Positions 21,438 to 63,041 of a DNA stretch of 64,000 nucleotides are shown here, one piece after another; position 1 is the first letter of the stretch, and each line of letters opens with the position of its first letter. Source of the stretch: Chlorokybus atmophyticus (Eukaryota; Plantae; Mesostigma and Chlorokybus algae); NCBI GenBank assembly GCA_009103225.1, contig RHPI01001116.1, positions 639,267-703,266 on the forward strand. Reading direction: 5' to 3'. The notes below the pieces were generated by a model, which did not search any database, was not told where the DNA came from, and was given only the letters and a program-made list of their open reading frames with translations. The translations under genes and the position numbers were made by a program.

Positions 21438-21547
21438 NNNNNNNNNNNNNNNNNNNNNNNNNNNNNNNNNNNNNNNNNNNNNNNNNNNNNNNNNNNNNNN
21501 NNNNNNNNNNNNNNNNNNNNNNNNNNNNNNNNNNNNNNNNNNNNNNN

Positions 21548-21641
<94 letters not shown>

Positions 21642-21647
21642 GGGGGG
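21438..21647. other. N gap followed by poly-G run (probable sequencing artefact)
   Basis: About 110 N followed by about 93 G. Confidence 0.85.
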
Positions 21648-25859: not shown

Positions 25860-26120
25860 ACTATACTAGTATAACATGCAGCACTCAGCACATACCATCT
25901 CATGCTTACACTCTACACCAGCAGTTCACCACCGGGCTGCCTACTCTACCTAAGACGCTAAGCCCCTACCCCATTAGCTCGACCAACATGCATGGTGTCC
26001 AGCAGCAATCACCTGCAGCACGGGCTGCGGTTAGCATGCAGCGCTTGGAACGTACACGACAGCATCAAACCCAAATGCACTTATAGACTCCCCCACGCCG
26101 CCGCCCGTCACTGTCCGCTC
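25860..26120 (+). repeat. Dispersed repeat family copy
   Basis: CACCACCGGGCTGCC...GCTAAGCCCCTACCCC.TTAG...CATGGTGTCCAGCA...ATCACC matches 37840-37975 closely. Confidence 0.7.
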
Positions 26121-28535: not shown

Positions 28536-29601
28536 CCCCTCCTAGCACCTGTCTTCAAGCAACGCCTTTGAACAACCCAAATGACAGAACCCCCTAATCT
28601 CAATCACGGCCTCTGGCAGCCACCAAGGAACACCTTCGGCTGCACGGATTGATGTCAAGCTCACAGCCACGCTCAGCACAGCGACGCCCGCAGCCACCAC
28701 GCCGCCGCACAAGCCAAAAGCACCGCCGCCGCCTGCAAATTAGTTTGGTTACTGCGACGGCAAATATTGCCAAACGCAGTTAGTCGCCAGACGCAAAACA
28801 AACAGCAGTGTCTTGAGGGACGTAACCGAACGCTCGGAACATGTCATCAATCTGAGTCAAGGCGTAATGGGATCAATTCTTAAGATAGATACGGCGTAGA
28901 CTGTTTGTTATTGTATTTAATGATGGGGGGCACACAAGGGTGTCGTCACAAAGACCGGCTGCGACCGCTCGGACCGGTTGGACTACGGCGGAGCCTGGTG
29001 CAGCGCTCCGGCGACGGTCCAGTTGCAGACCGTTTGGCCCTTGTATAGGTACCTAATGCACCGGCACTTGCGCAAAAAAGGGCTCGAGGATCTGAAAATG
29101 ACGACACCTTGCTGCTAATCCGGGTCCGTAACCGAAGGCCGGTCCTATCAGGAGGGCCCCTGACCAGCGTGATGGGACCCTTACCGGAAACCATCATCAG
29201 GTAACCATGTTACAGACTGTAGCTCATAATAATATCGGCTTTACTCCATCGGATATCTTGCAAACCTTCTGCCGTGGTCGGGTCTGCATCACCAAAGTGG
29301 TGGATATCCATAATAGTGCACGGTGTTTTCACCGTCAACTTGAGCAGCTCAGCAGCACGTCGGTTGACCGTGTTTGTCGTTAGGGTTTCAGAGGGTGTCA
29401 GCTGTAGGGTAGGGTTTGGTAGGGCTCCCAGCTGTGGCGGCCGCGGCGGCGGTGGAAGGCTGCGACGTGGCCGTGGTTGAAGAGGACGTTAGGGTGGCCG
29501 TCGTGGATGCTGTTGCGTCTGGTGGCTTGAGCGTTGCGGGTGCGGGGGGGATTTGGCCGGGGGCGGGTCCTGCGGAGGGGAGTTGCAGCCCGGCCTCCCG
29601 C

Positions 29602-31708
29602 ATGACCCGGCTGGGCTACATGCCTCTGGCGGAGGCTGAGTTGGCCGATGGCAGTGGGCCTCCGCCAGCTGTACCGGGCGAGGATGCACGGATGCGCGGT
29701 TTGGTTTTGGAAAGGCCGAGCTGCTCAACGGCTGATGCGCCGCTGCCCTGGGAGCGCAACATCAACGATGTGCTCAATGACGAGTGCCTCATGACCATCT
29801 TCAGCTATTTGGAAAATTTGAGGGAACGCAACACCTGCGCTCTGGTGTGCAAAAGGTGAACTGGTTTATGGTAAATTGCGATACACTGGCCAGTTGACTC
29901 ACAGGAAACAGTGCCGTTGCAGCCAAATCCTACGGTATTGTACTAATGTCCCAATGACTGTCCTGCAATGTGTTTTGATCATTAAGGGCGCCGCTGCTGT
30001 ACAATAAGGGTTAGGGTGTGATGGCTGACGGTAGCTTTCCTGCAGGAAAAAGTGTACATGTCGAACTTTTTACTAGCTAGTATCAATACGCGCGGCTGTA
30101 TACCTACATGGTATACACCGCTGTGTGTTTCAGCATGCATTACTCGCTTCTCTTCCGTCATGGGCTTTTGTTGAGCCTTTGTTAAGCGGTCTGAAGCTCC
30201 TTTGTTGCAGGTGGCTAGCTGCGGAGGGACAGTCGCGCACTACTCTGGCACTAAGACGCAGTTTCAAGCTCCAAGATCTGCCGACGCTATTGAATCGCTT
30301 TCGCCACTTGCGGTCGTTGGAGTTGTATTGGTATGTGGATGCCCTGGAGCGCGAGGAGCAAGTCAAAACAGTCTCCTCTGTTTTGAGGCAAGTAGAGAGT
30401 CTGCGTTTACATGGAGGCACGCACTTCTCCGACAGAAGCCTTGCTCTGACCACGGAGCATAGCTACGTCTTGAGTACGATGGAGTTTGTGGATTGCCCCT
30501 ACTTGACGGCTGCTGGTGTTGGGGAGGCCTCTTTGAGGTTGAAGAAGTTGGAGAAACTTAGCTTTTTGGACTGCCCGCTGTTAAGTGATGCAGCTTTGCA
30601 GCAAGTGGCGGAGCATTGTCATGGGCTAAAAGTCTTGGAGTTGGTAAAGTGCAGAGGTATCACAGACGAAGGCTTGTCGGCAATTGGGCAAGGTTGCCAT
30701 GAACTGCGCTCGCTGGTTATCAAGGATTGCAAGGCAATTAATGGCGAAGGGCTTCAAGCCATAGCAGATGGTTGCCCGTCTCTTTCCATTGCATCCTTTG
30801 AGCAAAAGGGCTTTACTGACCAACATATCATCACGCTGGCATCGTCGTGTTCCCAACTGATGGAGGTGTCATTAAAGTACTCAAAGCTCACCAATTCCGC
30901 GCTGTTTCCCCTCGCCAAGAACTGCCAGGGGTTGCACACGCTCAGGGTGTCGTCCTTCTGGATCAGCTGCAAGGGCATAGCAGCTATTGCGAAAGACTGC
31001 AAGTCGCTGCGCGTGCTGGACCTCAGCAATTGCAAGAACATTGATGACGTCGCCCTTTGGGCTGTTGGTGTCGGGCTTCGCGAGCTGGAGTCACTGGACT
31101 TGTATGGCTGCGACCGCGTTTCAGACCAAGGCATGCTTTTTCTGGCTCAAGGCTGCCCCACGCTTACGTCGCTCTGTCTGGAATGGTGCAAGGATGTGAG
31201 CGACTTTGGTGTCTCCCACATCTCTCGCCATTGTCCCTCCCTCAGATCCCTGTCTCTGCACAACTGCGAGCGCATTACAGACACAGGACTTGTTGCCCTG
31301 AGCCTCGGGTGTCGTGAGCTGGAGACCCTCGATGTCAGCTATTGCAAGCTAATTAAGGATGATGGGCTTTTCCATATAGCTCATGGATGCTCAAAGCTGA
31401 AGGTTTTGAGTCTCGTCGGCTGCGCCAACATTACCAGCAATGGCCTGTCTGCTATAGCCGCTGGGTGCCCACAGTTGAGGAGTCTGCGGTTGACCATGTG
31501 TCCATTGATTGATGACACGGCGCTGTACGCCTGCAGTCATCTCAAGTTCCTGCGTGTCTTGTACCTGGGCTTCTGCACACGTATTACAAACGCCGGTTTG
31601 CAGGCCGTGGCGTCCGGCTGCATCGCGCTTCAGAAGCTCAATGTGCACGGCTGTCTCAACATTACCAAGGATGTCTACCCAGAGAGCTGTGAAATCAACG
31701 AGTATTGA
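29602..31708 (+). CDS. F-box / cysteine-containing LRR protein (FBXL-type), 2 exons
   Basis: Exon 1 (29602-~29856) ends in the F-box INDVLNDECLMTIFSYL...CALVCKR|W. Exon 2 (~30210-31708) carries many L..LDLS.C..ITD.GL..IA.GC repeats. The start codon may lie further upstream. Confidence 0.9.
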
Positions 31709-32582: not shown

Positions 32583-34459
32583 TTACCTGCTCTTGAGCTT
32601 GCTCACCAGCTGCTCAATGATGTGCGCAGGGGACGCCTCTTCATTCCAATCTTGATCCCATGCTAGCCGCATCTGAATGCAGCCATAAGTAAGTGAAGCA
32701 ACCACCTTGTTTTCTTGGCTACAAACAGCAGCCAGCAGCAGCTCAACAACTCTGCTGTCCATTCATCAACTTGAACCTCCATACTGGCATGCACGCCTGT
32801 CCGTATGAAGCAAAACAGGCTGGCATGCAAAATGTACGCAGTGTACGCATACATGCATGCAGGCCAGACACCCACTCTCATTGCACAAACACGAAGCAAC
32901 TCCCGCATACCGGATACCGACCGGAAGCATTCGACCGGTGCAGTTCAAGCGCTTTGCTCCGCCACATGGGGTGCAAATGGCTCGCCCTACGCCCCTTCCT
33001 GCAGGCCTTGAACTTCAGGGTCTTCCATAGCAATCTACCTCTCTTCGTTCATTCTCCAGGGGTTGAAACCATCGTCACGAACAAGTCCTTCCAAGTGAGC
33101 AGCAAGCTTGGCGGTCTGCATCTTGCAGGGAGACCCCCCTTTCTCACGGTCTTTACACGCAGCCTGCACTCGTGTGATACCAAGCTCTTTTCATCATATG
33201 CATTACACGCACATAAACACAGCAAAATAGACTCGCCTTCACTATCTTCAGGTCCACTTGTCCAAGCCATTGTACCCGCACCCAACCTGTAGAAAGATCT
33301 TCCTTCGTCGCCTCACTGGTGAGTTGCCGCAGTCACCTGATAGACAGATCAAAAAGGACTTGTCGTTTGCTGCATTAACTGTTTGGTATGACATGCATAG
33401 CAACATACCATTTCCTTGTATTTCTGCTCCATAACAAAAACTTCCTGCATCACGTCCTATGCAAACTCTGCATCCGCCTTGTACTTCTGCATTGCTTCTC
33501 TGCACACCTTTCTGTCCTCAGCATCAGCCTGGCAGTGCACTGCATTGGGAACAGCACAACATTAAACTGACGCACATACCTCTGTCTCATGGGAGAAAAG
33601 CAGACACTGAATGCTGCTCACCCACTTCTGCCCGAGTGCATCAAGTTGGCTCCGACAACTCTCGTGCACCCTGCCAGGAACGAATATGTGTCCTGCACAT
33701 GCATGCATGTGCACGTGCATGACACACTTTCAGCCGGTTGAGTTGGTTCAGAACCAACTCAGTCAGTGAGTGACAGCCTCGCTATTCTCTCAGCATGATG
33801 CCAACATAGGCTTACATGCAAAGCTTTCTCTGGTGACTGTCGGCAAGTTCCTTGTGTTCGTCATCACGGTTTGTTGCTGGAGACCGTACGTCATCTTGTT
33901 GCTCATCTCCTTGCACCTGTTCTTGTTGCAGCTGCAGGTGCACTGACGACAACAACAAGCATGATGAATAATAATTTTGTGGATTTGCCTCAGCAACGAG
34001 CTGCATGCTTCTGCATACACACACTACAGTTGTGTGCTGCAAAACCAAAGCTCATCGTGCAAGCACTCACCGCTGCATGTGGATTGCAACAAGGCCATGC
34101 CTATATAGCGCTGAAGCTAGTTGACACACGCGCGCGCACATTACAGAATGAGCCTGTTCATCTTACCGCGTGCATGCGCTGCTTGTCTTGCAGGGCTTTG
34201 TGCGACATCTCTTCAACTTCGTCCACTTTGTTTATACACACAGCCAAACAAGGGGTCAGCACAGCAGCAAGCAGAAGGTGCTTGTAAGCTGCTAGCTGCC
34301 ACGCATAAAGCCACCGACAGCGAGCTTGAATGTCATGCATGTGCCGGAAAGGCCAGAACCAGCAGCAGAGGAAGCAAAGCCTCCGTGTTCGTACTTGCGT
34401 TTCAGTTTCTGCTGGTGAACCGCGGAAAACTTATGCTGTTACTGCTGCAGCGCCTCCAT
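32583..34459 (-). pseudogene. XH-family paralogue A (coiled-coil + XH; 5'-truncated pseudogene)
   Basis: Exons homologous to exons 8-15 of the gene at 44986-49038 (MEALQQ*, KYKADAEFA*DVMQ, GWVRVQWLGQVDLKIVK, FNPWRM, SNASGRYP, LAWDQDWNEEASPAHIIEQLVSK). In-frame stops at 34439, 33457, 33035 and 32987, plus frameshifts. Confidence 0.8.
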
Positions 34460-35411
34460 GCCTCGGGCCGTTTGCGCTTTGCTTCAAGTGCGTAAGTAGA
34501 AGCTCAGTAGCTAATGGCGGCGGCGCGCCGGCTTTGCTTGGCATGCTAGACCATGCCTCGGCAACGAGGTGCGAACTTGGCGGAGAGCTTGATGACAAAC
34601 ATGAGGGCGGCGATGTGGCGGAGCGCAGCTTTCCTGCTGCCATGCCAGCTTGCTCGTGTCTCTGCGCTGCTGGTTCATGACGACAGGAGTTGTTGATAAT
34701 CCTTCAAGTTGGAATGCTGCATGTTGACATCTACCTTACCGCGCAAGCATTCCAACAGCCCGTTGCTTGAGTGTTTAAGTGGTTTTGTTGCCGATGGCTG
34801 GTGAGAGCTGGCCGAGGCACCACAGTCCATGTTAGGTGAGACTCTGTCACCGCAGTGAAGGCTTACAGTGCGTGCGCAGTATGGTCTCACCTCACTAGCG
34901 GTGACAATTTTCATGTGAGTTTACTACACTCGTTGCCACTGTCAGAGTTTGAAGGGGTCATTTAGTCCAGATATACCAAAAGCCTAGGACACTGTCAAAT
35001 TGTCGCTGAGGCACCAGAGTCCATGTGAGGTGAGACTTGACTAAGCACAAACACTGACGTGCCTGCGCAGCGTAGACCACCTCACTCGTGGACACTGTCT
35101 TTGGAGGGGAGTAGAGGAGCTGCAAGTGCTTTCATCATGTGACAGCAGTGGTGGGCACAGAGCAAGTTGGCATGACAGCCTTCCTGAGTGAGGAAGACTG
35201 CTGTGCTGCCCCACGTCACCTTTCTGCTGGCTGTCAGCAAGCCCCGCCAGGTTCAGTAAGCTTGGAGCATCGCGTGAGCTTAACGCATTAAGCAACCTTA
35301 GAGCACTGTGCCAAGGCAAATACTTACATGTAGCCGTCCTTCAATCAAGGCATTGCCAGCCGTGAAGTCATGCAATTTGCCGCAACACACCAAGCGCAAG
35401 CAGCCAGCGGC

Positions 35412-37444
35412 ATGGAGGCGCTGCAGCAGCGACTGCAGCGCACAGCAGAAGCTGCTGCAGTCCGCCAGTAGCAGCTGAAACGCAAGTATGGACACTGTTG
35501 TTGCTTCCCTTTCTGCGCTCACGTTTCCGGCACATGCATGATGTTTTAGCTAGTTGTGGATGGGGTAGTGCGTGCAGCTTACAAGCACCTTCTGCTTGCT
35601 GTGCTGACCCTTCTTGTGCTGTCTGTCCAGAAAGAGTCGGCGAATTGGAAGAAAGGTCGCGCAAAGCCGTGCAAGACGAGCTGCTTGTAGTAAGATGAGA
35701 AGCAACTCATCTGAGCGCAATTTCGTGTGTTCGTGAACTAGCTTCAGCACTGTAGGCATGCATGGCCTTGTCCAAGTGCAGCGATGAGTGCTTGCACGGT
35801 GAGCTGTAACTTTGCACACAGACAATGGTGTTGTCTCCATGCAGAAGCATGCCTTCATGCATGAGCTGCACAGCTCGTCGCTCAAGCAATTGCAATGCTG
35901 GTTGCAAGAACCATTGTGTTTTTTGTTCAATAAGTTGTTGCGTGTGCAGCGCGAAGTGAGGCGTTCCGTTGACCACGAATGCGCAGAGCTGCGTCTGCAG
36001 CTGCAAGAGGAGCAGCAAAGGCAGGAAGATGAGCACCAACACGCCATGCCTTCGCCAGCAGCAAGGAGCTCTGAGGACCAATACAAAGCACTTTTCGACG
36101 GTCACCAGAACGAGCTTCGCATGTAAGCTCAAGTTGGCTACCACAACAAGGCTGACAGTGCCTTGTTTCGGCCTCGTAGGCGCAGTATCACTGTATGCAT
36201 GTGGCTGACACAGAAGTATTTCTTGGCAGGGTACGAGAAAGTTCTTAAAGCCAACTTGACGTACTCAAGTATGAGCGGGTACGCAACCTTTTCGTTTTCC
36301 ATTAGCAATTGGCCTCTGTGCTCACCAGCACAGATAGCGGAATGTGCATCCTTTTACTGTTGTGCTTTTCTCCATGCGTGTCAGTATGCTACCAGGTTCT
36401 TGCTGAGGAGAACAATAAGGCACGCGAACACGAAGTGCACAAGTACAAGTCGGAAGCGGAGCTGGCACAAAGTTTGCTACAGGACGTGTTTGTTATGGAG
36501 CCGAAGTACAAGGACATGGTAATGAGCACAGTTGCAGCAAGATGTTGTTTGCATTGCGGTCCCAATCAGTGTTCATGGCCGCCATGCGGCATTTAGTCTT
36601 TCATGCTCAACAATTTGTGATCTCATGTGGGTTTGTAGCCAGTAGCCAAGGTAGAACAATTTCTTTGTACACATGCTTTGGCTATCAGGCGACCATCGCA
36701 ACTCGCACTAGCAAGGCGGAAGCCCTGGACAAGGGGTGGGTGCAAGTCAAATGGCTTGGAGTTATCGACTTCAAGATAGTCAAGGCAAGCCTCGTTTGCT
36801 GTTTATGCATGACATGTGCTTCACAGATATGAGTGCTGGCGTATACATCGCATGAGTGCAGGCTGCATTAGACGACCACAAGAAGCGTGGGTTGCGTTGG
36901 AAAATGAAAGTTGCGGAGCTCGCTTCCCGCATGGAGCAGATTGTTTGTCTCAACGACATCAACCCTTGAAAAGTGAACCAGGGGAGATATGAGATTGATA
37001 TGGAACACCCAAAGGTTAAAGATCTGCAGGTAGTGGGGCGAGCCACTCGCACGCCATGTAGCCGAACAAGCCCTCGAACTACACCAAGTCAATGCTTCCG
37101 AGCGGTTCTCGGTACATGCGCTCATTAAATGCGCATTTTGGAATGCATGTAATATTGGAGTGAGAAGAGGTTGTACGCTGCTGTTGCATGTCACTCAGCT
37201 TGACTGCTGTTGCTCTTGCAATCAGATTCGGGTTGCATGGGATTAAGAGAAGCATGAAGAGGTGACACCGGCGCACATTATTAAGCAGCTAGTCAGCAAG
37301 AGGAGGTCAATTTCAACAAGGAAGAAGCCACATCTCGCTTCTTCAGACACGTTGCCTCATCCCACCTATACTGGTGTACAGTACGTACATATGGTGCAAG
37401 TAAGACTTGTCCTTCGCTCACTGGAATTCCTCGGCATTGTGTAG
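35412..37444 (+). pseudogene. XH-family paralogue B (coiled-coil + XH; 5'-truncated pseudogene)
   Basis: MEALQQRLQRTAEAAAVRQ*, KYKSEAELAQ, KGWVQVKWLGVIDFKIVK, DINP*K, EPLARHVAEQALELHQVNAS, VAWD*EKHEEVTPAHIIKQLVSK. Stops at 35469, 36967 and 37243, plus a frameshift in the XH exon. Confidence 0.8.
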
Positions 37445-37839
37445 CGAGTACAGTGTAGGTACGCTGTTGCGTCGTAGGATCGTTGTTCAACCACCCTCAT
37501 ACGTACATGGACAGTCGAATGCAAGCTGCATATGGCGGGTTAACACGCCACTCAAGGCCTGTACATTCCCTCTACCTGTGCAACCATACTGTATGGGTAA
37601 CCGGTGCAAATGCAGCTCTGTCAGTGTTGCTTGACTGGCACAGCACAGCTGACTGCTGTTTGGTCCATGTCCAAAGTACAACATCATTCCAAGCAGTAAC
37701 GCCCGCAAACACTTGTGTATAAGAGATAGTGTGCTAGATGAGTAGCATGCAAGGTGCGAAGCACACACTTTTTCATGCATGTCACTCACATTGCCCGCAC
37801 ACCATGCATGTTGCCATAGTACCATACCCTTTATATACA

Positions 37840-38090
37840 ACATGCAGCACTCAGTACATGCCATGTCATGCTTACACTCTACACTAACAACTCACCACCG
37901 GGCTGCCAACTACCTAACACGCTAAGCCCCTACCCCGTTAGTCACACCAACTTGCATGGTGTCCAGCAATCACCGGCGCATGCGCCTTGGTCAGCAACCA
38001 CCACCGTCACTGCATCAACGGCAGCAATCAGCCAGCGTGGACTCCCCCTTCCCCTCGCCTCCATCCTCGTCACAACTCTGCCGCATCTCC
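37840..38090 (+). repeat. Dispersed repeat family copy
   Basis: Closely similar to 25860-26000; ends in GGACTCCCCCTTCCCC. Confidence 0.7.
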
Positions 38091-38269
38091 CGTCACTAGG
38101 CGTTTGGGTTGCGCCCATCGGCACGCAGCATGCATGCTCACGCAATGCATGCAACACTCCCTGGGTTGCGGTGCAGCCGTGCAGTCGAGGTCGGTGTTGT
38201 GTCTCACACGCACAAGCATGCATACACTATGTGCATATACTATGCATGCTTGCATGACTGATGGAGTGT

Positions 38270-39360
38270 ATCGGTAGTATAGGAAGTAGCTAAGTTGGTA
38301 GGAGTAGATGAGCCCGGTGGTTAGTAGAGCATGCGTATGTATGTAAGGGGTATGGTACGGTGGCAGCATGCATGGTGTGGACAATGCGAATGGCATGTGG
38401 CTGGCTGCTGCGTGCATGTTGTGTGAGCGTGACACTATGTGCATATACTATGCATGCGCCACCCCGCATTGAGTGTGTACACGTGTTGTACAGGTACTTA
38501 CTGTGACTGCGTGGGTTGACTGGCATGCATGACTGACGGGTGGTGGCCGTAGTGGTGATAGATGTAGAGATAGTGTAGAGTGGCAAGTGATAAAGTAGCC
38601 CGGTGGTGTCCTATTGACCGAGTGATGCTGTGTGCTATGCGTGTGTAGTGCATGTCATGCACGTTGTGCGTGGGTGTGTAGCATGCGCTGCACGCAGTCA
38701 ATCCCTTCTCCGTTCTTTTGTACACTTATCTAACACATCTCTTGTTCTCACGTGCAGGCACTTGCGCATACGCACACGCAAGCACAGTTGCACACAGTTG
38801 CACTACCAAAAGCAAAGGCAATTGCAGAGTACATGGGGAGCAAAGGATTATGCCCGTGTCGTCCGAATGGAGTGCACATGGAGCCGCGACGCAGAGGGAG
38901 TAGCCATACCTGCCGTACATGCATGCATGCGTGCGTGTACTGACACAAACCCTAAGAACGGCAGTGAGCGACGCAGAAGTAGGTGGGCGGAGGTGCCACG
39001 CCGCGGGCCGCCAGGCTGGCGGAGGGGATGTGGGCGAAGGAGAAGGGGGAGTCTGTTGAGTCTGCTGTGGAAGGATGGGCCGGTATTTAACAGCCGTGCT
39101 ACAGGTGATTGAGTCAGCAGCTGCATGCATGCATGTCTAACAGCAGGGTGGGATGGTTGGTTAGTGAAAGGCCGTAGAGTGAGTAGAGTTGCCCGGTGGT
39201 TGCTATGGTCGGCTTGAGGTACGTATGTGGTGAGCTGCCATGCATGCTATTATTGGACATAATCAATGTACACAAAATGCGATGTGGGGTGGCGCATGCA
39301 TAGTACATGCACATAGCGTCACGCTCACACAGAGTAGGTAGCCCGGTGGTCGCGTATGTA
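38270..39360 (-). repeat. Cluster of minus-strand copies of the dispersed repeat family
   Basis: GCCCGGTGG core at ~38311, ~38598, ~39190 and ~39340, and AAGGGGGAGTC at ~39043 (reverse complement of the family's C-rich end). Confidence 0.6.
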
Positions 39361-39974
39361 GTAACGAGGTGAGTGTGTTCTGCAGAGTGTTGCATGCGTG
39401 GTGTGGTCTGAATGGGCATACCCCTCTCGAATTCTTTGTACAACATGCACGCAGCAGGCAGCCACATAGGCATGTTCTTTGTGTGTGCAAGGCATTCATT
39501 GCATGTCTAGACTAGTTTTGGAGATTCATGTACACTGCAACACCCTCCCCACCCGATTACTACACCACATCTAAGAGGCTTGCTAAGGAATCTAACTATG
39601 TGCAATGCAATGCAAGACGGGCAGGCAGGGGACTGACAGCGAGGCAAGGGACTGACGCAAGCAAGAAATTCTGTGTCCCACCTGCAGTGGCGGTGCATGC
39701 AAAGACAAGAGCCAAGTTCATCACAGAACAGCAGACAGTAGGTAGCCACCAACTGTAAAGAGCGAAGCCAGCGACAAGCCACTTACCGTTACAACCAAGC
39801 AGAAAACCATGCACGGGCTGGCCCTAACAGCTGAACGGTCAGTGTGAAGTGTACCTATGTACACCTGATTAAACACAATACTCTATCTCCTTTGACAGCT
39901 ATGGTGTATGCATATATGAACATGCGATGCAATGACATGCGTCGCAGGTGCCGGTGATTTGGGGGACACAACGC

Positions 39975-41936
39975 CTATCCAGTGGGGGCATTGCTTCTCC
40001 CACTCTTCGCAATTGGCCTGGGGTCCAGCAGCTCTTCAATCTTGTCAACCAGTTGGTTGTTGATATGTGCCGGCGTCGACTCTTCCTTAGTCTCCGCGTT
40101 CCATGCAATCCGCATCTGCAATAAGCGCTTCAAGTACAGCACCAAACCCGCACACACATGCATATGCTTGGCCGAACAGTCGAGTATCAATCAGATAGCT
40201 GCTCAGCTCAAAGTGAGTGGCATGCAATGTTGCTGTGCGTTGCTGTGCATTGCCTGAAGCGGAAGTTGCGTATCTTTGAATGCATGAGGTGCTATGCCAT
40301 ACCGGATACCGCCCAGAAGGGTTGAAGTTGTGCAACTCCAGTGCTCTTGCTGCAACATGGCGTGCCAACGCATCCCCCCACATTGCCCTCAACTTCTTCA
40401 GTTTTGGATGCTCCATGTTGACTTCATTTGTTGCCGTTCCGTCTCGTTCCACTACTTTCCAAGGTTGAACTTGTTCCGCCTCCAGCTGAGAGCACAGTGT
40501 GGCTGCCTTCTTGTCAACGTTAGTCACTTGCGTTTTGGCTGTCAAGGCAGCCTGCATCATCCATGTTGCTCAAGTGAGTGACGAGCAGCATCAATGATGG
40601 CCGGTCGCAAACCAACGGATTTCATACACCCTGTAGGCCGCCATTGGATCAATGACTTTCCTTCACAACCTCAAAGTCAAGTTCTCCAAGGTGCTTTAGG
40701 GCAACCCATCCCTTGTCCATGGCTTCCTTTACAGCCTCTCCAGTGCGTCTCGCCTCAGCCACCTGGTTGCAGTGTCCTCACAAGACTGGTGCTTTGTCTT
40801 TAACAGAAAATTATCATCAAAAGCCACAAATGCCAAGATACTCACCATGTCTTTGGACTTCTGTTCCATGACTATGAGTGGCTGGAGTATGTCCTGCGCA
40901 AACTCAGCGTCTGCCTTGTATTGTTCTACTTCTTCCTCTCTTTGCTTCTTGTCTTGTTCAGCAGCGGCCTGCATTGGCAAATTCAAGATCAGATCACGAA
41001 AGACAGCTTGCAAGTCAAGCAGCAGTAAAGAGTAGCTCCTGGACACATGGAGCAGCCATGTCACTAACCAGCTTTTGCTGGATGGTGTGGAAGTCGGTTT
41101 CCTGCTTGTCGTTCAACCTGTGGCAGTAAGAAACATGAAGAGCACCATTCCAACATGCAGCTTGCGCTTTGCATTACGACAACAACAAGCATCGCCTGAC
41201 ATAATGACAAACTGTCACTGCTTACATGCATAGCTCGCTCTGGTGACTGTCGGCAAGCGCTTTGTACTCGTTATCACGAATTGTTGCTGACCGCATGGCA
41301 TCATGCTCCTCATCTTGTTGCCTGAGCTGTTCTTCTTGCAACTGCAGGCGCAGCTTCAAGCATTCGTCGTCCAGGCGACGCCTCGCTTCGCGCTTCACAC
41401 ACAAGAGCTTGTTGAGCAGCAACAACAACAACAATAACTAGCGTCATGATTGCTTGAGAGACGAGCTGCATGCTTCTGCACAGACACACCACAAGAGTTT
41501 GTGTGCTGTCATTTTGCGGCTCACCGGGCAAACACTTACTGCTGCATTGCGTTTGTTAAAAAGGCCATGCATGCCTGCAGTGCCGACGCTGACGCACGCA
41601 CCACAATACACATGGATGACTCCCTTCATCTTACCGCATGCAGCTCGTCTTGCAGGACTTTGTGCGACTTTTCTTCAACTTCTTCCACTCTGTTGAACAT
41701 ACAGCACCAGAAGAGTCAGCACAGCAAATAGAGTTGTTTGTGGGCTGCCACGCACTTAGCCATCGACAGCTACTTAAGCAAGCATGTGCTAAGATAGGGG
41801 AGTAAGCAGCAAAGGAAAACAAACAGGAGAACAAACAAACAAAGCAAACGTCGCATCCATACTTGCGTTTCAGCTTCTGTTGGCGAACTTCCAAAGCTCC
41901 TGCTGTGCGCTGCAGCTGCTGCTGCAGCGCCTCCAT
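39975..41936 (-). CDS. XH-family paralogue C: coiled-coil + XH only, all 8 exons open in frame, one GA-AG intron
   Basis: Exons read MEALQQQLQRTAGALEVRQQKLKRK...KGWVALKHLGELDFEVVK|AALTAKTQ...KAATLCSQLEAE..QPWKVVERDG...HPKLKKLRAMWGDALARHVAARALELHNFNPSGRYP|MRIAWNAETKEESTPAHINNQL...APTG*. No stops found. The donor at 40660 is GA. It may be a young pseudogene. Confidence 0.6.
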
Positions 41937-42789
41937 GCCTCCGGCTTTTCGCGCTTGGTTTGTTGCGGCAATTGCAGGACAATTGCAGGACGGCTGGCAA
42001 TGCCTTGCTCGAGGAGGGTTCACTTGCCTTAGCACAATGCTTCGCCAACTTGGCACGGGGCTTGCTGACGGCCAACAGAAAGGTGACTCACCTTTGATGA
42101 TGTGGGCTGAGTGGAAGTTAGGCTGCTGTGCTGCCCACATCACTGCTGTCATGCCAACTTGCGCTTTGCGCCCACTACTGTCACATCATTGTGGAAATTC
42201 TTTAGCAGCTCACATCTATTTGACTACGCAAGAATTACGGCATTGTCAACTCGGCCTAGCTACATCTGCATGTAGCGCTTGAGGACATTGCTCGTGTACA
42301 GCCTACTGTATGATTGTTTGAGTAGGGTAGCGTTGGACACTACAACCGCCAGTTGGCACCCGTGTAATGTATTCATTCATCTAGACTAGAGGCCCCTTCA
42401 AACTCTGACTGTGTCAACGAGTACAGTGCGACTACTGGTCTCAGTGCTACACTGCGCAGGCACTTCAAGTGCGTGCCTTCACTACGGTACCGAAGCCTTT
42501 CCTCACACGAACTGTGATGAGGACTCATCCTGCGTTGCAGGCTGGCTGAAGCATGCTGCTGACGGAGCGAGCAGTCAAAGCAGGTACGGTGGACCCACCA
42601 GTAAGAGGAAGAGAGGGACACTTCAGCCTTGCAAACCCATGCACACGTGCTTGCTGGGCTCATTCGCCAACCAGCTCTGGCCATTTGTCCACCGTCAACA
42701 ACAACGCTACTGACACTGTTGTGCTTGTAAAGGCTTGCGAGAGAGGTATGCCAACTGTCAACCAACTCTGGTCGCAGACAGCAGCGGTG

Positions 42790-43055
42790 ACTCACCACTG
42801 GTGAGACAAGCGCAAGTTGGCGCGACAGCCAAACTACTGCTCCACGTCACCGCCCTGCTGTCAGCAAGCTCCCCGCCAGATTCGCACAGCGCTTTGTACT
42901 AACCAACACTAACATGCCAAGCCAACCTCCAGCACGCCGTCGCCTTTCAGCTACTGACTTTGCGCAAACAAGCGCAAATAGCTCGAGGCATGGAGGCGCT
43001 GCAGCACACAGCAGCAGCTGCTGAACTTTGCCAGCGAACGTTGCTGAACTGAACC
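42790..43055 (+). pseudogene. XH-family paralogue E (first-exon remnant only)
   Basis: GAGGCATGGAGGCGCTGCAGCA at 42985 and its upstream 200 bp match the reverse complement of paralogue A's upstream region. Confidence 0.65.
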
Positions 43056-44224
43056 GAAAACACCGAGGACACTGATGTTAAACTATGACAATTGTGTCAC
43101 TAAGGCATGGCATCGACAGTCCTACCGTCACTGAGTCCGACCCAGTGGCACCAATGCATGACACCGAATGCTAGGCTTGTGTTGCAACGAGACGATGAGC
43201 AAGTGTCTGATGAACCGCATAATGTGTAATCGTGTAGATGTGCGTGTGCGTTTGCGGGTGTACGTGAGCGCACATTCGCATACGTGAATGCGACTTTGCG
43301 CAGATGTGCGGGCGGGCTGATCTCCATCCATGCGCATATGCTTGCGTGCGTGCGCGCATGCGATTGTGACTGTGTGTTGCATGTGCACTGTCACTGTGCA
43401 TGTACGTACATGTGTACATGCGCGTGCACGCAGGGTAAGGGACCACCTACTGGAACTGATTGTGTTGAAAAGTCCAAACAACTGTTTACACATGCACATG
43501 CGCTGTGTACTGGGTGCTGTATCATACATGCTCAAAACGTGTTTGCATGCGCACTCAGTTAGTCGACATGCACATGCCCATACACAGCAGCAGTCAACCA
43601 CAGCCGTCATCATATTGCAGTCACCACCGCCAGGCTATATGGTCTATGTGTGGAGGTAATTACCGGAGGTGGTGGCAATTGTACAAACAATGCGCAACGG
43701 ATATGTACAAAAATGTAAAACGGAAATGCACATGCATAGTGGCATGCACAGTCAGTAGCATGCAGAGTGAGACAGCACATACCAACCACACTATTGTCGA
43801 GTTAACCACCGGGTCCATTCACTACCTCACACAGTACTCTACCCCTACTACCCCGTTAGCCATGCAAGCATGCACATGCATATGCGTTCACCTGCCCACA
43901 GGGCCGATGCAGTCTATGTACAAAAGGTATATGCTACCATGTGTACAGGATATATGACGTGCTGTTAGGCACACGCATGCAATGTATCACAACCACTCAA
44001 GCATTACATGCACACTAGTATACATGGGTGTACAGGATAAGTGAGTGAGATTGATTTATACATGCATGGCATTTACATGAGCACTCACCCCGAGTACATC
44101 ACAAATCTTTACTTACACATTTGTGTGTGTGTGTAACATATATGCAATGTTATGCATGTGACCCCATTGCATTGTGAACATGACATGCACACACACACGC
44201 ACACTTGCACACGCCAGCAAACAA

Positions 44225-44410
44225 CTTCTTACACCACCGGGCTACCTATACAAACTAGGTAGCTACTTTCGCTAAGCCCTTGCCCCGTTAGTCAACATGC
44301 ATGCGTAGTTACCTGTACACAAGTAGAGTCCCCACAGTTAGGCACCGGTGTGGCTGTAGTTGTGGCAGCAGCACAAAGCAGACGGACTCCCCCTCCCTCT
44401 GCTCTCTCGC
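44225..44410 (+). repeat. Dispersed repeat family copy (a partial copy also lies at ~43795-43870)
   Basis: CACCACCGGGCTAC...GCTAAGCCCTTGCCCCGTTAGTCA...GGACTCCCCCTCCC. Confidence 0.6.
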
Positions 44411-44454
44411 TTTGTGTGTGTGGTGGTGTGGGGGGGGTTAGCCAAAATAGTTTT

Positions 44455-44650
<196 letters not shown>

Positions 44651-44985
44651 GAACGCAGGCTAGCTTAAGTTCTACTAACGTTGCCTGATGGTTTAAGTGC
44701 CTGGTTGAAAACCCAGCACAAATTCTTGACACTTCTGTGCGAAGTTTGAGTGAGCAGAGCATAGCAAGCAACAAGCCACCACCACTGGCTCTACAACCAA
44801 GCAGCAACCATGCACGAGGGCTGGCCCAGCCTGGCCCTTGTTGGCTGAACAGTCAGTGTGAAGTGTCCGATTGCAGCTATGTACATCCTGATACATTACA
44901 GCAATCTACCCCTTCGACAGAAACAGTTTATCTACATGCATTGCCATCACATGCCTCACAGCTGGTAACCAGTAAGAGACAACGT

Positions 44986-47900
44986 CTATCCAGTTGGGGC
45001 CGGATTGAGTTTCCTTTTCTTTGCACTTGCCTTGGCCATCAGCGCTGTTATCTTGCCAACCAGCTGGTTGATGATATGTCCCGGCGTCGACTCGTCATTG
45101 GTCTCTGCGTCCCACGGAATCCACAACTGCGACAAGTGCTTTAGACCACCGCAACAAGAAGCCACACACACACACATATGCTTGCTCTAGCGGGCAAGTA
45201 TGCATCAAGTCGCTGTTCAAAGCAAACATATCTGTGCCTGCAGTGGAAGTTGCACTTGGTTTTATGAGGTTCCTTGCCATACCTCATACCGCCCAGAAGG
45301 GTTGAAGTTGTGCAACTCCAGTGCTCTTGCTGCAACATGGCGTGCCAATGCATCCCCCCACATTGCCCTCAACTTCTTCAGTATTGGATGCTCCATGTTG
45401 ACTTCATTTGTTGCCGTTCCGTCTCGTTCCACTACGTTCCAAGGGTTGAACTTGTGGTTTTGAACGAGTTCCGCCTCCAGCTGAGAGCACAGTGTGGCTG
45501 CCTCCGTGTCAAAGTCAACGCCCTGCTGCTTTTTGTCTTTCAAGGCAGCCTGCACCAACAATATCATGCTCGGAATGACAAAGGAACAGCGTTGATGGTG
45601 GCTGATGAGCAAGCACTGAAACGCACGCCATCCTACAACCACAAGTAAAGGATCTGTTGCTTGCCTGTATGATCTTGGTGTCAAGCAACCCAAGCCGCCT
45701 TACCGCAACCCATCTCATACTGATGGCTTTCTTTATACCCTCTCCAGTGCGTCTTGCCTCAGCCACCTGGTTGCATTGTCATTAAAAGAGCGCTGCTGCG
45801 CTGCTCTACTGCTAACAACCAATTGCTGCAAGGCCACAAACATAACCAAGCTGTGGCTCACCATGTCCTTGAATTTCTGTTCCTGGACCATAAGCGGCTG
45901 CAGCAACTCCTGCGCAAGCTCAGCTTGAAACTTGTAATCTTCTACTTCTTTTTCTCGTGTTCTTTTGTCTTGTTCAGCAGCAGCCTGCATTGCCATTTGT
46001 TGAGCGCGGAAGTACAGCTTCATAGACAGGCAGCCCTGAGGTGGTAAAGGACACATGGGGCAGCCAATCCGCGTACCAGCTTTTGCTGAATGACGCTGAA
46101 CTCAGTTTCTTGTTTATCGTTCAACCTGCGGCAGGGTCATGCAGTGCAGCATCTGAAGATACGTAATACCATGTGATGTATGCCAAAAGACACTGCGCCC
46201 ACATGCATATTGACATAGTAGTAGTCCACAATTTTGCGACAAGGAAACAACTTACCTGCGCAGGTCTTCTTGATATTTGCGGGTGAGTTCTTCGTACTGC
46301 TTGTCGTTGCATTGCTGTGCCTGGCCTATGGTGTCCTGGAGCTGCTTCTCATCGTTTAACCTCTGCTGTTTCTGCTCCAGCTCTTTGTGAAGCCTCGCGC
46401 ATTCCTCGCTCAAGCGCCTCCTGGCGTCCAAATCTCCATGCTGCAAGCCAAAGCAAGACCTCAGCAACTGTGGACACTGTCGACACTCTGCCTCATTACA
46501 CATTTTGCTACTGCATAGCACTACTCTGCACTTCGTGAGCATTTCATCATTGACTGGATATGCAAACATGCATTGGCACTCCTTCTGCAATGTCACTTGG
46601 ACAGGTGGAAAAAGCGCAAAGGCTGTAAGTATACTGCTGCAATAATGGTCGCCACGTTGTACACGGCACTGCCAGGTTAGGTGACGCTTCTTGCTGCAGA
46701 TTAACGAACGGACAAGCGGCGTACCGCATGAAATTCTCGCTCTTTGGCCTGCTTCCAGCTTGTCGTCAGGTCTGCTACATTTCCCTCCAAAGCGTTAATC
46801 CTGCCACAGTATGCAAGTCGCTGATTGGTACCCATCAACATTCATGAAGCTCACAAGCAGACAGTGCATGTTGCAAGATGGAGGGATAGACTGCCTGCAG
46901 CCATGTAAGCAATGCCACCGCATCCTTGCAAATCTTAGTGACACAGACAAACATCAGCGCAACACAGACAGCATGACACTTACATGTCCTGCATCTGCAA
47001 CTGACGCATCTTGGCTGCCTGTGCTCTGCGATGCAACTGCTGCTGCATCTCCTCGTGCATCTTGCGAAGATTTTCCTCATGCTTGTTCTCCTGCTGGGCC
47101 AAGCGTTCAACAAGGTCGCGCTTTCTGCACAAACATGGTATGAAACAGTCCAACACCTAGACAAGACAAGCAAAACACCATTCGTGCATACTAGTTTTTG
47201 GGCTCACACAAAGCACACGCAGCGAACACAATGTATTACTCAATCAATGATTTGAAGCTGCTTACTCTCGCTGGTTTCGTGCCATCTCTTGTTCCATCTG
47301 TTCCCTTTCGTCCAGCCATTGCCGCTCTCGCTCCACGTGCTGGGCTTGCTGCCGCTTACCCGCAAGCTCCACCTCGTCTGTGCGCCTTGCTTTCTCTGCC
47401 AGCTGGATGCGCCCCTCCCGTACGAGCAAACTGCAACGTTGCAAAGATTCTAGCTCAGCGGGTGCAGCGAAGGAGGAAGAGCAAGCATTGACTTACTTGA
47501 AGTCGCCAACCTCCCACTTCACAAACTTCTTCAGTGGGTCGAGCTCTTGCATGTCGGATGGCCTGGCCAAGTACCCATAGAGCTGCAACCATATATTGCA
47601 CAATCAACAGTCAGACTGACCATGTGCCACCAGCTGGCAGCAGCACCAGAATTTGCATTCACCAGCTGACAGTGACTCAGCGCGTGTGATGCGGTTGCAT
47701 GCCAAGAGCAACGGGACAAGGGGAGATCCATACAAGTTATAGTTACCTCCGTTCCCAGATCTGGTGTCCTGCGCCGCTCATTGAAGTTCTGTCGACCGTG
47801 TTTGGTAGATTGAAATGCCTCTTCCGCCCGCTTGGCTTCATCATACCTGTTGCCAAGCCAGATGACACTTACATGATGCATGTTGCCCAGTGCATGTGTG

Positions 47901-49038
47901 GCCAGTATTCGTTGCCCGTAGCAAGAGTACTGACCCAAATGCAGTTTTTTCAAAGTCAACAAATGCGAAGCCGAGGAAGCCTGTCCGGCCATAAGCTAGC
48001 TTCCTGTGAGCCACCTGGAACTTGGCAAAAGCAGCACCAAGCTGCTGGTTCCCTGTCGCAGTCCCGTAGGAGCCATCCTCGTGTTCTATTCTTGGCAGGT
48101 TTTGCACTATGAGTGTGGGAGGCCACACAATACCTGCACCTTCAACCTGCCATGCAATGAAAGTTTAACGACATCTCGCAGGCAAACATCACGACAAGCA
48201 AGCAAAGGTCAAAACTCTGTGTTGCAAACTTGCAATCGCTAGTCACTCTAACCTTTGGAAGGGCTGTTCGTTCTGAGCGAGTTGATGCGGGTGGCGGGAG
48301 TGCGAACGACTTTGGTGTTGGAGTGGGTTTTGGCGCTGCAGACCCCAGGTATCCATGCCCACAAGCCTTGCGCACTGAAGTCACTACAAGTAACAACACG
48401 CCATGTATCAACTGCGTTGAGACATGACAGTCAATCTGGTCGTCCTTACCATCATTTGCGCAGCCCAGTATGTTCTTGGCAATGTGTAATGCCAGGCCCA
48501 CGTGCGCGACTCTGCTGCTGTATGTTTCTTTCGTTGATCTCGACATGCCATCCGCATGCTGCCAAATGGCATTGTAACTGCTCGTGTCCTCGCCATCTAT
48601 ATAGGAACTGCGTGTCTGAGGGCATATGGGACAGAAGTACCCTCCTTTTGGCATCGGACCTGCTGTTAAGCCATACTTGTTGCTGTGGAAGTCCTCGGAG
48701 ATGGCCTGCGCTCTGTCATCCAACTGCACAATTAAGGAAAAGCTGTTTTGGACATTATGAAGAAGGGAAGAAGGTTGAGAGAGGTTGACAGAATCTTGAT
48801 GTAGACCTCATCATCGCTGCTGTCGGTGTAGTTTAAGTCTTCCAGGCTAATCCGTTGCGCAGCAGCGGTTCGTGTAACCAAGCGCACATCTTGCTGCCTT
48901 TCAGTAGATTCTGCATCTTCTTGCATGGGTGTCGCAGGTCGCATTGTGCTCCATGTCGAAGGCTGCAAATACGCTACGCCAGATCCACCATCTGAAGGGG
49001 GCTGTCTGCTCCCCCATCCTTGCTGCTGCCAGCTACTC
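44986..49038 (-). CDS. IDN2/FDM-like protein (zf-XS, XS, coiled coil, XH), intact, 15 coding exons
   Basis: Hand-spliced with no stop. zf-XS: YFCPICP...YNAIWQHADGMSRS...AHVGLALHIAKNIL. XS: IVWPPTLIVQNLP...GRTGFLGFAFVDFEKTAFGYDEAKRAEEAF...LYGYLARPSD. Coiled coil. XH: WVAVRRLGLLD...AATLCSQLE...FNPWNVV...LKKLRAMWGD...ELHNFNPSGRYE..IPWDAE. Upstream exons cannot be excluded. Confidence 0.88.
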
Positions 49039-50403
49039 ATCCTGCATGCAGACAGAAAGTGTGATGCAACGCTGCAACAAGCACGCTTGTTCCACTGCGC
49101 GACCACCAAGAACAATACTCATGGTCTTGCGAAAGCATCCGACCCACCTGGTAAGGTGGTGTCAATCAGGGATCTTCAACTGTCTTCAGACAACAGCAAA
49201 GAGAAGCTGCTGCTGTGCATGCGGCTCTGCACATGCTTCTTCTGCCTACATGCACTTCTCTCTTCCGAGTGCTTCCAGCATCCTTCAGCAAGGTGAGCGC
49301 TGCATGGCAGGTGCCTGCATGCACTGTACTACTTCAGCACAGCGGTACGGCCTTGTGCAAGTGACTCCAAAAGGCAACTAGGCAAAACAGAATGGAGACC
49401 ACAACGAACAACTAGTGCTTTAGCTGATTGTTGCGAGCAAGCTGGTGATCAGTGTCAATCACTGACTTGCTGTGCTGAGCATGCGTTTGCCTTTGAAGAT
49501 AAGTGCTTAGAAGGGCTGTGGGTTGCCTTGCCCTCCATGCATGCATTGCTCCCCTTACCAATCGTTGACATGTTTTTAACTTAAGATCGCAATGCACTGC
49601 CAAAGCTGAGTATGACTGCCTGAACAAGCAGAAAAACCTCTGGCATTGTTCGACAAACAACCTCACAGTACTAACAGCCAAGAGTTTCCAAAGCGCATGG
49701 CGCTGACGTAAACTTGCACAATGCAAGCTTCTTTCTAGAACGTTTGCTCCTTTACTGTTGCGAAACTGGTTTTAACATTGCTTACAACTGCAGGCAGCTG
49801 CGCTTGCAGAGCTCCCTTACCGCTGCTGCTCGAAAAAGACTCAAGCCCAGCCAACAGAGGCAGAAGCCACCGGTGTGCTTCACTTGCGCTCCAAAGCCAG
49901 CAGCAAGGCAACTATGTCACCTCAATGTCGCCCCTTGATGCCGCCTAAGCAACTACCACAGATTCGCCTCCGCCTCCGCCTCCGCCTCCGCCTCCACCTC
50001 CGCCGCCACCACCGCTGACCAAATGCACAAAGCACACAGCATGATCAACGCTGAAAACTTGCGTACAATGCATGCGGCGGTGGCGGCGGCGGCGGCGGCG
50101 GAGGCAGCTTAGCTGTAAGCGTATGTTGAAGAAAGACAGGCCATCACCAACCTGGGACAGCTGAGCCTGCAGTGCTTGTGCTATTTGCTCTGGCGACGTG
50201 ACGGCGAGGTTTCTGTTCAACTTTGCTTCGCCGCCGCTTGATGGTCAGTGGCAGGTGAAACGTGCTGTGTGTGTTTTGTGGCCTCTTGGCTGTGTGGAAG
50301 AGTGCTATACTGGTGCAGTGATATTGGCCATTTAAGCTGCAAGCAGTGCAAGTAGAGGGTTGGGGCGTCACCCGCCGGCGTTATTCTAGACTAGTTGTTG
50401 GTG

Positions 50404-63040: not shown

Positions 63041-63041
63041 C

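What the first reader, a model, noticed from the sequence alone, without database searches (positions are those of the whole stretch)
32583..49038. RNA-silencing gene cluster: one intact IDN2/FDM-like gene plus four truncated XH paralogues in a nested inverted duplication
Seen: five homologous loci arranged A(-) B(+) ... C(-) E(+) ... D(-). The truncated copies begin at the equivalent of D exon 8 (MEALQQQLQR vs MHEEMQQQLHR, same phase-2 intron), so they lack zf-XS/XS. The A/B spacer (34850-34970) is the reverse complement of the C/E spacer (42390-42490). C's upstream matches B's and E's matches A's. The [A-B] block was therefore re-duplicated in inverted orientation about an axis near 38.5 kb. 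Known: IDN2/FDM proteins act in RdDM, with XS binding dsRNA and XH mediating dimerisation. Inference: read-through across these inverted repeats could yield dsRNA/siRNA matching D, giving a self-regulating silencing locus in an alga.
Basis: partly seen in the sequence, partly recalled or inferred. Interest (0 to 1): 0.8.

Follow-up and report, generated by a model that had tools for sequence, protein, structure and literature searches.

The report
Algal IDN2-like gene with decayed copies
In the early-branching green alga Chlorokybus, one complete IDN2/FDM-type RNA-silencing gene sits beside one short, still-open copy that keeps only its partner-binding half, two dead copies and a stub; the layout is real, but the copies are too diverged to make small RNAs against the parent gene.

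Summary
Five homologous loci lie as A(-) B(+) C(-) E(+) D(-). The A/B head-to-head pair, spacer included, is collinear in inverted orientation with the C/E pair. The window is Chlorokybus atmophyticus. D is the annotated gene Chrsp35S05217 (748 aa, 15 GT-AG exons, XS and XH domains).

"Four truncated XH paralogues" overstates the case. A and B are pseudogenes with in-frame stops, frameshifts and a lost acceptor. E is only an exon-1 stub next to an assembly gap.

Only C is open: 8 exons, 321 aa, coiled coil plus XH. C is a mosaic. Exons 1-3 resemble B, and exon 4 to the 3' flank resembles D, with 96% identity over 181 nt, which indicates gene conversion. An open frame by chance has P of about 6e-4, and C's substitutions favour third codon positions, so C is probably functional. 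One ancestral GC donor now reads GA in C.

The self-silencing idea fails for D. The inverted arms would pair (z about -30), but no 21-mer from A, B or E matches D within 2 mismatches. C lies in the same orientation as D.

XH-only proteins are common in angiosperms. This is an ordinary duplicated gene-family locus with modest evolutionary interest. Other first-stage notes of this scan describe D and C on this same stretch.

The parts
44986..49040 (-). D: full-length IDN2/FDM-like gene (Chlorokybus atmophyticus Chrsp35S05217), 15 exons, 748 aa. Domains: N-terminal region, zf-XS-like C2H2, XS, coiled coil, XH.
   Evidence: P0001 maps exactly onto 15 GT-AG exons. EukProt/JGI name. Pfam: XS 79 bits, XH 58 bits, zf-XS 13.5 bits, which is below the cut-off.
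39975..41936 (-). C: truncated paralogue with an open frame. My 8-exon model is 966 nt and 321 aa, coiled coil plus XH, with no XS or zf-XS. Exons: 41936-41863, 41689-41635, 41407-41226, 41117-41069, 40968-40846, 40762-40670, 40551-40303, 40115-39975.
   Evidence: Model and splice sites. Pfam XH at 52 bits on the exon-7 ORF. 55% identity to D residues 425-748, E 1e-101. The ancestral exon-6 GC donor reads GA at 40660, with in-frame GT donors 6 and 9 nt upstream.
35412..37340 (+). B: pseudogene of the truncated type.
   Evidence: In-register TAG at 35469-35471 and TAA at 37244-37246. Indels of +4/-1 in exon 3 and several frameshifting indels in exon 7. Exon 4 is not recognisable.
32583..34461 (-). 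A: pseudogene of the truncated type.
   Evidence: 10-nt deletion plus TAA (34433-34431) in exon 1, exon-2 acceptor AG>AA, TAG at 33459-33457 in exon 5, and more than 10 indels and 3 stops in exon 7.
42788..43048 (+). E: 5' remnant only (A-type upstream region plus a degenerate exon 1).
   Evidence: 34434-34677 matches 43013-42788 inverted, at 69%. The exon-1 alignment carries a 12-nt deletion. Nothing A- or B-like lies in 43040-44455.
34462..35411 (.). A/B divergent spacer, the inverted counterpart of the C/E spacer at 41937-42984.
   Evidence: 34818-35418 matches 42519-41930 inverted, E 2e-20. Shorter blocks reach 87-94% identity.
39759..41126 (-). D-type part of C, from exon 4 to 216 nt past the stop: a gene-conversion tract shared with D 44756-46134. 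It contains a younger patch, 40284-40464 matching 45264-45444.
   Evidence: One continuous HSP of 1446 nt at 71% that includes introns. 181 nt at 96%. Sliding-window identity switches from B-like to D-like near 41130-41260. dS is 2.0 for exons 1-3 against 0.37 for exons 4-8.
37341..39758 (.). Central spacer of the large palindrome-like structure. It holds a dispersed repeat fragment and short inverted repeats.
   Evidence: 37715-37996 matches 25808-26036 at 83-85%. Short inverted matches lie in 37778-39467.
44455..44651 (.). Assembly gap (N) followed by a 196-nt poly-G artefact, between E and the 3' end of D.
   Evidence: TRF result. The same N-plus-homopolymer pattern occurs at 21438-21647 and 63040-63125.

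Best explanation
This is a lineage-specific cluster of the SGS3/IDN2 family in Chlorokybus atmophyticus, built by DNA-level partial duplications.

Proposed history:
1. An old duplication copied the 3' part of D, from inside exon 8 onward, covering the coiled coil and XH.
2. That truncated unit became a head-to-head pair.
3. The pair was duplicated again in inverted orientation, giving A, B, C and E.
4. A and B decayed into pseudogenes, and E is reduced to a stub.
5. C kept an open 321-aa coiled-coil + XH frame. Its 3' two-thirds were overwritten by gene conversion with D at least twice.

By analogy with Arabidopsis, C most likely makes an XS-less subunit. It would join the D protein through the XH domain or the coiled coil, acting as a partner or competitor that cannot bind RNA itself.

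The structure, the lesions and the mosaic are shown here. Expression of C and any C-D interaction are inferred.
For: - Organism and D model.
- Introns are retained in every copy, so duplication was at the DNA level.
- Inverted collinearity.
- Lesions in A and B.
- C has an open frame with GT-AG at 7 introns.
- Neutral simulation gives P about 6e-4 for no premature stop and P of 0.002-0.01 for intact splice dinucleotides.
- Changes on the C lineage fall 31 at codon positions 1+2 against 28 at position 3, where neutrality predicts 2:1 (P=0.017).
- In exons 1-3, C has fewer lineage-specific changes than B or A (23 against 35 and 48).
- The two indels that A and B place on the C lineage in exon 7 (-15 and -3 nt) are both in frame.
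- Mosaic structure.
- The XH residues that I map by spacing onto IDN2 E600 and W616 are present in C and D (PMC3342958).
- In Arabidopsis the IDN2 XH domain alone is sufficient for binding paralogues, and the coiled coil mediates dimerisation (PMC3342958).
- Among the 118 best XH hits in a search limited to 181-576 aa, 83 are 400 aa or shorter, most carry PF03469 only, and all named ones are angiosperm proteins.
Against: - There is no transcript evidence for C. I could not determine whether C is annotated. It did not appear as a separate hit in the exhaustive search and may be clustered under D.
- The ancestral GC donor of C intron 6, conserved in A, B and D, reads GA in C. If the nearby GT donors are not used, the frame stops 10 nt later and the XH domain is lost.
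- Pairwise dN/dS for C against D in exons 4-8 is 0.55. That also fits a neutral C paired with a constrained D.
- Gene conversion from D could itself have refreshed part of C's open frame.
Confidence: 0.6

Rival explanations
1. All four short copies, C included, are relics. On this view C is an unexpressed pseudogene, and its frame is open only because gene conversion from D repeatedly repaired its 3' part, with the short 5' part surviving by chance.
For: - The conversion tract covers exons 4-8.
- Exon 7 is nearly identical to D, with dS 0.09 and omega about 1.
- Exons 1-3 alone would stay open by chance with P of roughly 0.1, scaling the stop rate.
- The ancestral donor of intron 6 is mutated to GA.
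- C did not appear as its own entry.
Against: - Even using the C-D divergence measured after conversion, an open frame across the whole gene has P about 6e-4.
- Changes on the C lineage are biased towards third positions (P=0.017), and C evolves no faster than D in the 3' half: 20 lineage-specific changes against 24.
- The indels assignable to the C lineage are in frame.
Confidence: 0.27
2. This is a modified form of the reader's idea. The diverged A/B palindrome is transcribed through and works as a hairpin small-RNA or proto-miRNA locus, following the inverted-duplication model of MIR gene birth. Its plausible target would be C, not D.
For: - The arms fold into very stable imperfect duplexes (z of -30 to -38, 73-78% of the arm paired, helices up to 23 bp).
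- A and B share 22-23-nt perfect matches with C around its start codon, and 60-74 21-mers within 2 mismatches.
- The inverted-duplication model is established in plants (PMC3237417).
Against: - No 21-mer from A, B or E lies within 2 mismatches of D.
- The arms are only about 70% identical.
- There is no evidence of transcription or small RNAs.
- No methylation-type C>T decay is seen in A or B.
- A 6-kb loop separates B from C.
Confidence: 0.07
3. The copies are an assembly artefact, from haplotigs or mis-joined repeats.
For: A gap plus a poly-G artefact lies at 44455-44651, between E and D.
Against: - The copies differ by about 30%, carry distinct lesions, and sit in unique flanking sequence within gap-free stretches from 32.5 to 44.4 kb.
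- The annotated D protein maps at 100%.
Confidence: 0.02

Closest known systems
Arabidopsis IDN2 / FDM (IDP, IDNL) proteins of the SGS3-like family
   Same: D has the same order of parts: a C2H2-like zinc-finger region, XS, a long coiled coil and a C-terminal XH. The best database relatives of its XH are angiosperm FDM and IDN2 proteins.
   Different: - D is very divergent. The next-best XH hit is E 1e-8 at about 30-40% identity, and zf-XS scores below the Pfam cut-off.
- The host is an early-branching streptophyte alga.
- Any role in RNA-directed DNA methylation is untested. Only partial NRPD1/NRPE1-like transcripts have been reported from Chlorokybus (PMC11194755).
XH-only / XS-less SGS3-like proteins of angiosperms (200-400 aa 'factor of DNA methylation-like' or 'domain XH' proteins)
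   Same: C has the same layout and size: about 185 aa rich in E/Q/L/K followed by XH, 321 aa in total. P0005 from Apium, for example, is 329 aa. The SGS3 family is described as having 'various combinations' of its domains (PMC3378875).
   Different: C arose independently inside Chlorokybus from its own full-length neighbour and is kept similar to it by gene conversion. Function is untested, both for C and for most of the plant proteins.
Inverted-duplication origin of plant hairpin siRNA / MIR loci
   Same: Inverted copies of part of a protein-coding gene lie next to each other and are able to fold back (PMC3237417).
   Different: The arms are about 70% identical and share no siRNA-length identity with the founder gene D. 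No small RNAs are known from the locus.
Tandem or inverted gene-family clusters with pseudogenes and interlocus gene conversion
   Same: There is one functional parent, decayed partial copies that retain introns, and mosaic similarity with a sharp breakpoint.
   Different: Nothing unusual, apart from the family involved and the palindrome-like arrangement of two head-to-head pairs.

Membership tests
SGS3-like / IDN2-FDM family (gene D) | XS domain (PF03468) | tested here: met
   79.1 bits against a cut-off of 25, residues 219-329 of P0001. The exon piece alone scores 35.7 bits.
SGS3-like / IDN2-FDM family (gene D) | C-terminal XH domain (PF03469), which separates IDN2/FDM from SGS3 | tested here: met
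   58.1 bits against a cut-off of 22.2, residues 618-731.
SGS3-like / IDN2-FDM family (gene D) | N-terminal zf-XS C2H2 zinc finger (PF03470) | tested here: inconclusive
   13.5-15.4 bits, below the cut-off of 22. A CPIC...H...H pattern is visible in the sequence.
SGS3-like / IDN2-FDM family (gene D) | Coiled coil between XS and XH | not tested
   No coiled-coil predictor was run. The segment is E/Q/L/K/R-rich and aligns with the same segment of plant proteins.
SGS3-like / IDN2-FDM family (gene D) | Binds dsRNA with 5' overhangs and acts in RdDM | not testable with these tools
   This needs biochemistry and genetics.
XS-less, XH-only SGS3-like proteins (gene C) | XH domain present; XS and zf-XS absent | tested here: met
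   XH scores 52.2 bits on the exon-7 ORF. No XS or zf-XS homology lies outside D. C's start codon is about 1 kb from E's, leaving no room for upstream exons.
XS-less, XH-only SGS3-like proteins (gene C) | Intact, expressed gene | tested here: inconclusive
   The frame is open with canonical sites and there are signs of selection. However, the ancestral intron-6 donor now reads GA, and no transcript data could be reached.
XS-less, XH-only SGS3-like proteins (loci A, B, E) | Intact reading frame encoding XH | tested here: not met
   A and B have multiple stops and frameshifts. E has no XH sequence at all.
Hairpin siRNA / proto-MIR locus from inverted duplication | Inverted arms able to form a stable foldback | tested here: met
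   Cofold z of -30 to -38 against dinucleotide shuffles. The 1.5-kb fold pairs the A and B arms.
Hairpin siRNA / proto-MIR locus from inverted duplication | Near-perfect complementarity of 20 nt or more to the proposed target D | tested here: not met
   Zero 21-mers within 2 mismatches between A, B or E and D.
Hairpin siRNA / proto-MIR locus from inverted duplication | Co-transcription of both arms and production of small RNAs | not testable with these tools
   No RNA-seq or sRNA-seq data were available.

The most novel reading that the evidence does not exclude
Chlorokybus independently evolved a two-part IDN2 system. A full-length RNA-binding subunit (D) would work with an XS-less coiled-coil + XH partner or decoy (C) encoded next door. 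C is kept compatible with D by recurrent gene conversion of the XH exon. Angiosperms separately have many XH-only FDM-like proteins. The decayed A/B palindrome might in addition give hairpin small RNAs that tune C. If so, modular XH-mediated assembly would predate land plants and canonical Pol IV/V RdDM.
Probability: 0.3. Interest if true: 0.5.

Novelty: new member of a known kind. Interest (0 to 1): 0.3.

Why it matters
The literature treats IDN2/FDM proteins as plant-specific. A complete XS-coiled-coil-XH gene in one of the earliest-branching streptophyte algae pushes that architecture back before land plants. Its likely functional XH-only neighbour offers a simple two-gene system for asking what XH-mediated assembly does.

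The cluster is also a clean example of partial duplication, decay and interlocus gene conversion. It gives no support to a self-regulating silencing loop on D, so that more exciting reading should be dropped unless small-RNA data say otherwise.

Tried and rejected
- The word-index protein search with C's XH exon found nothing, because of the length filter.
- A profile search seeded with plant XH proteins plus the C and D exons returned only angiosperm proteins in the 120 rows shown. It could not tell whether C is annotated.
- A search with the full D protein found only D itself and P0146.
- The look-up of encoding contigs has no record of D, so no gene calls for the locus were available.
- Rfam found nothing in the window.
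- Pfam on the short exon-6 and exon-8 pieces gave nothing.
- I tested for RIP-like or methylation-driven C>T decay in A and B. The substitution spectrum is balanced and CpG o/e is similar in all four copies, so this was rejected.
- I searched 43040-44455 for the rest of E. There is none.
- Pairwise dN/dS for C against D cannot separate a constrained C from a neutral C, so I used polarised counts and simulation instead.
- Haplotig or mis-assembly was rejected because the copies differ by about 30%.
- Processed pseudogenes were rejected because the introns are retained.
- It was therefore not sent to any database, look-up or structure tool, and was analysed only inside scripts.
Full report
**Identity of the locus**

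An exhaustive phmmer search with D's XH exon returned one strong hit, P0001 (748 aa, E 1e-54), and 17 weak ones. P0001 is EukProt EP00898 Chlorokybus atmophyticus P004869, also named jgi/Chlat1 Chrsp35S05217. Of the nine weaker hits I looked up, eight are angiosperm FDM/IDN2-family or hypothetical proteins and one is an unnamed Logan sequence.

An exact spliced matcher places P0001 at 100% identity on the minus strand, 49040-44986, as 15 GT-AG exons. The window is therefore Chlorokybus, and D is an already annotated gene. Pfam on P0001 gives XS at 79 bits, XH at 58 bits and zf-XS at 13.5 bits, which is below the cut-off.

**Checking the observation**

Self-BLAST, repeat finding and translated searches confirm five homologous loci:

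| Locus | Strand | Coordinates |
|---|---|---|
| A | - | 32583-34461 |
| B | + | 35412-37340 |
| C | - | 39975-41936 |
| E | + | 42788-43048 |
| D | - | 44986-49040 |

- The short copies begin inside the equivalent of D exon 8. C exon 1 and D exon 8 both end in a phase-2 donor.
- Nothing resembling XS or zf-XS lies outside D.
- A sensitive comparison shows the whole A/B junction is collinear, in inverted orientation, with the C/E junction. The matches are 34434-34677 to 43013-42788, 34818-35418 to 42519-41930, and 35346-36128 to 42007-41220.
- So B corresponds to C and A to E, and a head-to-head pair was re-duplicated as an inverted copy around roughly 38.5 kb.
- At 67-71% identity these copies cannot be haplotigs.

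Exon-by-exon alignment to C shows that A and B are pseudogenes.

- A carries a 10-nt deletion and a TAA in exon 1, an AG>AA acceptor at exon 2, a TAG in exon 5, and more than ten indels and three stops in exon 7.
- B carries TAG at 35469-35471 (codon 20), +4/-1 indels in exon 3, several frameshifts in exon 7, and TAA at 37244-37246.
- E is only an upstream region plus a degenerate exon 1. The 1.4 kb that follows has no similarity to A or B.
- E ends near an N at 44455 followed by 196 G's. The same N-plus-homopolymer signature marks the other gaps in the window, so the E-D junction is not truly assembled.

**The C locus**

Reading the minus strand gives an 8-exon model of 966 nt and 321 aa. It has an ATG at 41936, a stop at 39975 and GT-AG at all seven introns. 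It aligns to D residues 425-748 at 55% identity, E 1e-101. Its exon-7 ORF scores 52 bits on Pfam XH.

There is one blemish. The ancestral donor of intron 6 is a GC donor, conserved in D (GCAAGC), B (GCAAGC) and A (GCGAGT), but it reads GAAAGT in C. In-frame GT donors lie 6 and 9 nt upstream. If neither is used, the frame stops 10 nt further on.

The same comparison suggests the JGI model of D ends exon 13 too early. The GC donor 39 nt downstream would restore the 'RMGE...KPF'-like start of XH seen in the plant consensus.

**C is a mosaic**

In 150-nt windows, C is closest to B from 42010 to about 41260 (0.54-0.81 identity, against 0.39-0.55 to D). From about 41110 to 39761 it is closest to D (0.59-0.96, against 0.37-0.60 to B).

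- dS between C and D is about 2.0 in exons 1-3 and 0.37 in exons 4-8.
- Introns 4-7 and the 3' flank align above shuffled controls, while introns 1-3 do not.
- A 181-nt patch in the XH exon is 96% identical.

The simplest reading is gene conversion between D and C after the A/B/C radiation, with a second, recent patch.

**Is C functional?**

Pairwise dN/dS for C against D (0.55 in exons 4-8) is uninformative, because a neutral C paired with a constrained D would give the same value. I therefore used three other tests.

1. I simulated neutral change on the C lineage at half the measured neutral divergence. The frame stays open in 0.06% of runs, and all 28 splice nucleotides survive with P of 0.002-0.01.
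2. I polarised substitutions with the other copies as outgroups. C shows 31 changes at codon positions 1+2 against 28 at position 3 (neutral expectation 2:1, P=0.017). In exons 1-3 C has fewer lineage-specific changes than B or A (23 against 35 and 48). In the 3' half C changes no faster than D (20 against 24).
3. The two exon-7 indels that A and B place on the C lineage (-15 and -3 nt) are both in frame.

I put the probability that C is, or recently was, a working gene at about 0.6-0.7. No transcript evidence could be reached.

**Likely mechanism for C**

In Arabidopsis the IDN2 coiled coil mediates homodimerisation. The XH domain alone is sufficient to bind the paralogues IDP1 and IDP2, which themselves do not bind dsRNA (PMC3342958). 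XH also mediates FDDM1-FDDM2 pairing (PMC8872474).

The Glu and Trp residues that I map by their 16-residue spacing onto IDN2 E600 and W616 are present in C and D. That mapping is an inference. C would therefore be an XS-less subunit or competitor that joins D.

The architecture is not new. The SGS3 family is described as having various domain combinations (PMC3378875). The profile search was limited to proteins of 181-576 aa. Of its 118 best hits, 83 are 400 aa or shorter, most carry XH only, and every named one is an angiosperm protein. Some come from transcript-sized Logan contigs.

**The regulatory hypothesis**

If both arms were on one transcript they would pair strongly. Cofold z is -30 to -38, 73-78% of the arm is paired, and helices reach 23 bp. 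The 1.5-kb fold across the A/B junction is a long hairpin.

However, A, B and E share no 21-mer with D, even with two mismatches allowed. The only copy with D-identical 21-mers is C (104 of them), and it lies in the same orientation as D. A self-regulating loop on D is therefore not supported.

What remains possible is small RNAs from A/B acting on C, because 22-23-nt perfect matches sit at C's start region. This echoes the inverted-duplication model of MIR gene birth (PMC3237417). I give it about 0.07.

Substitutions in A and B show no C>T excess, and CpG depletion is equal in all four copies. Nothing marks A and B as specially methylated repeats.

**Context**

- A second Chlorokybus protein, P0146 (Chrsp99S08530, 525 aa), shares only D's N-terminal and zinc-finger region: 71% over 163 aa, with no Pfam hit. 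Both halves of D have therefore spawned partial copies.
- The upstream neighbour is an F-box/LRR gene.
- Partial NRPD1/NRPE1-like transcripts have been reported from Chlorokybus (PMC11194755), so an early RdDM-like pathway in this alga is conceivable.
- The papers I could search do not discuss IDN2 in streptophyte algae.
- Other first-stage notes of this scan already flag D and C on this same stretch.

**Verdict**

The structure is real and the history is well resolved. The functional reading is ordinary: one parent gene, one probably functional XS-less paralogue, and three relics. It is a new member of a known kind, of modest interest.

Noticed in passing
window 21438-21647, 44455-44651, 63040-63125: Every N or N-run in the window abuts a homopolymer G or C run of 84-196 nt. 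These look like gap-filling or sequencing artefacts, so sequence across these points is not truly contiguous.
   Followed up: partly
window 45664-45704 (D exon 13 donor): The JGI model of D uses a GT donor at 45703. A, B and D share a conserved GC donor 39 nt further on. Using it would add 13 residues and restore the start of the XH domain, so the annotation is probably mis-spliced or the site is alternatively spliced.
   Followed up: partly
P0146 (Chlorokybus Chrsp99S08530, not in this window): This second partial paralogue lies on another scaffold. Its first 162 aa are 71% identical to D's N-terminal and zf-XS region, followed by about 360 aa with no Pfam match.
   Followed up: partly
window 29416-31708 (+): An F-box plus leucine-rich-repeat gene lies immediately upstream of A, on the strand that would read into A antisense.
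   Followed up: no
window 37715-37996 and 25808-26036: A dispersed repeat (83-85% identity) sits in the central spacer of the palindrome. It is probably a transposon fragment.
   Followed up: no
window 34811-34843 and 35005-35037: A 33-nt direct repeat at 91% identity lies inside the A/B spacer.
   Followed up: no
window 50395-51649 (+): Another first-stage note calls this a LOTUS/OST-HTH gene. Pfam found no LOTUS match at E<=0.01 in the two largest ORFs there.
   Followed up: partly
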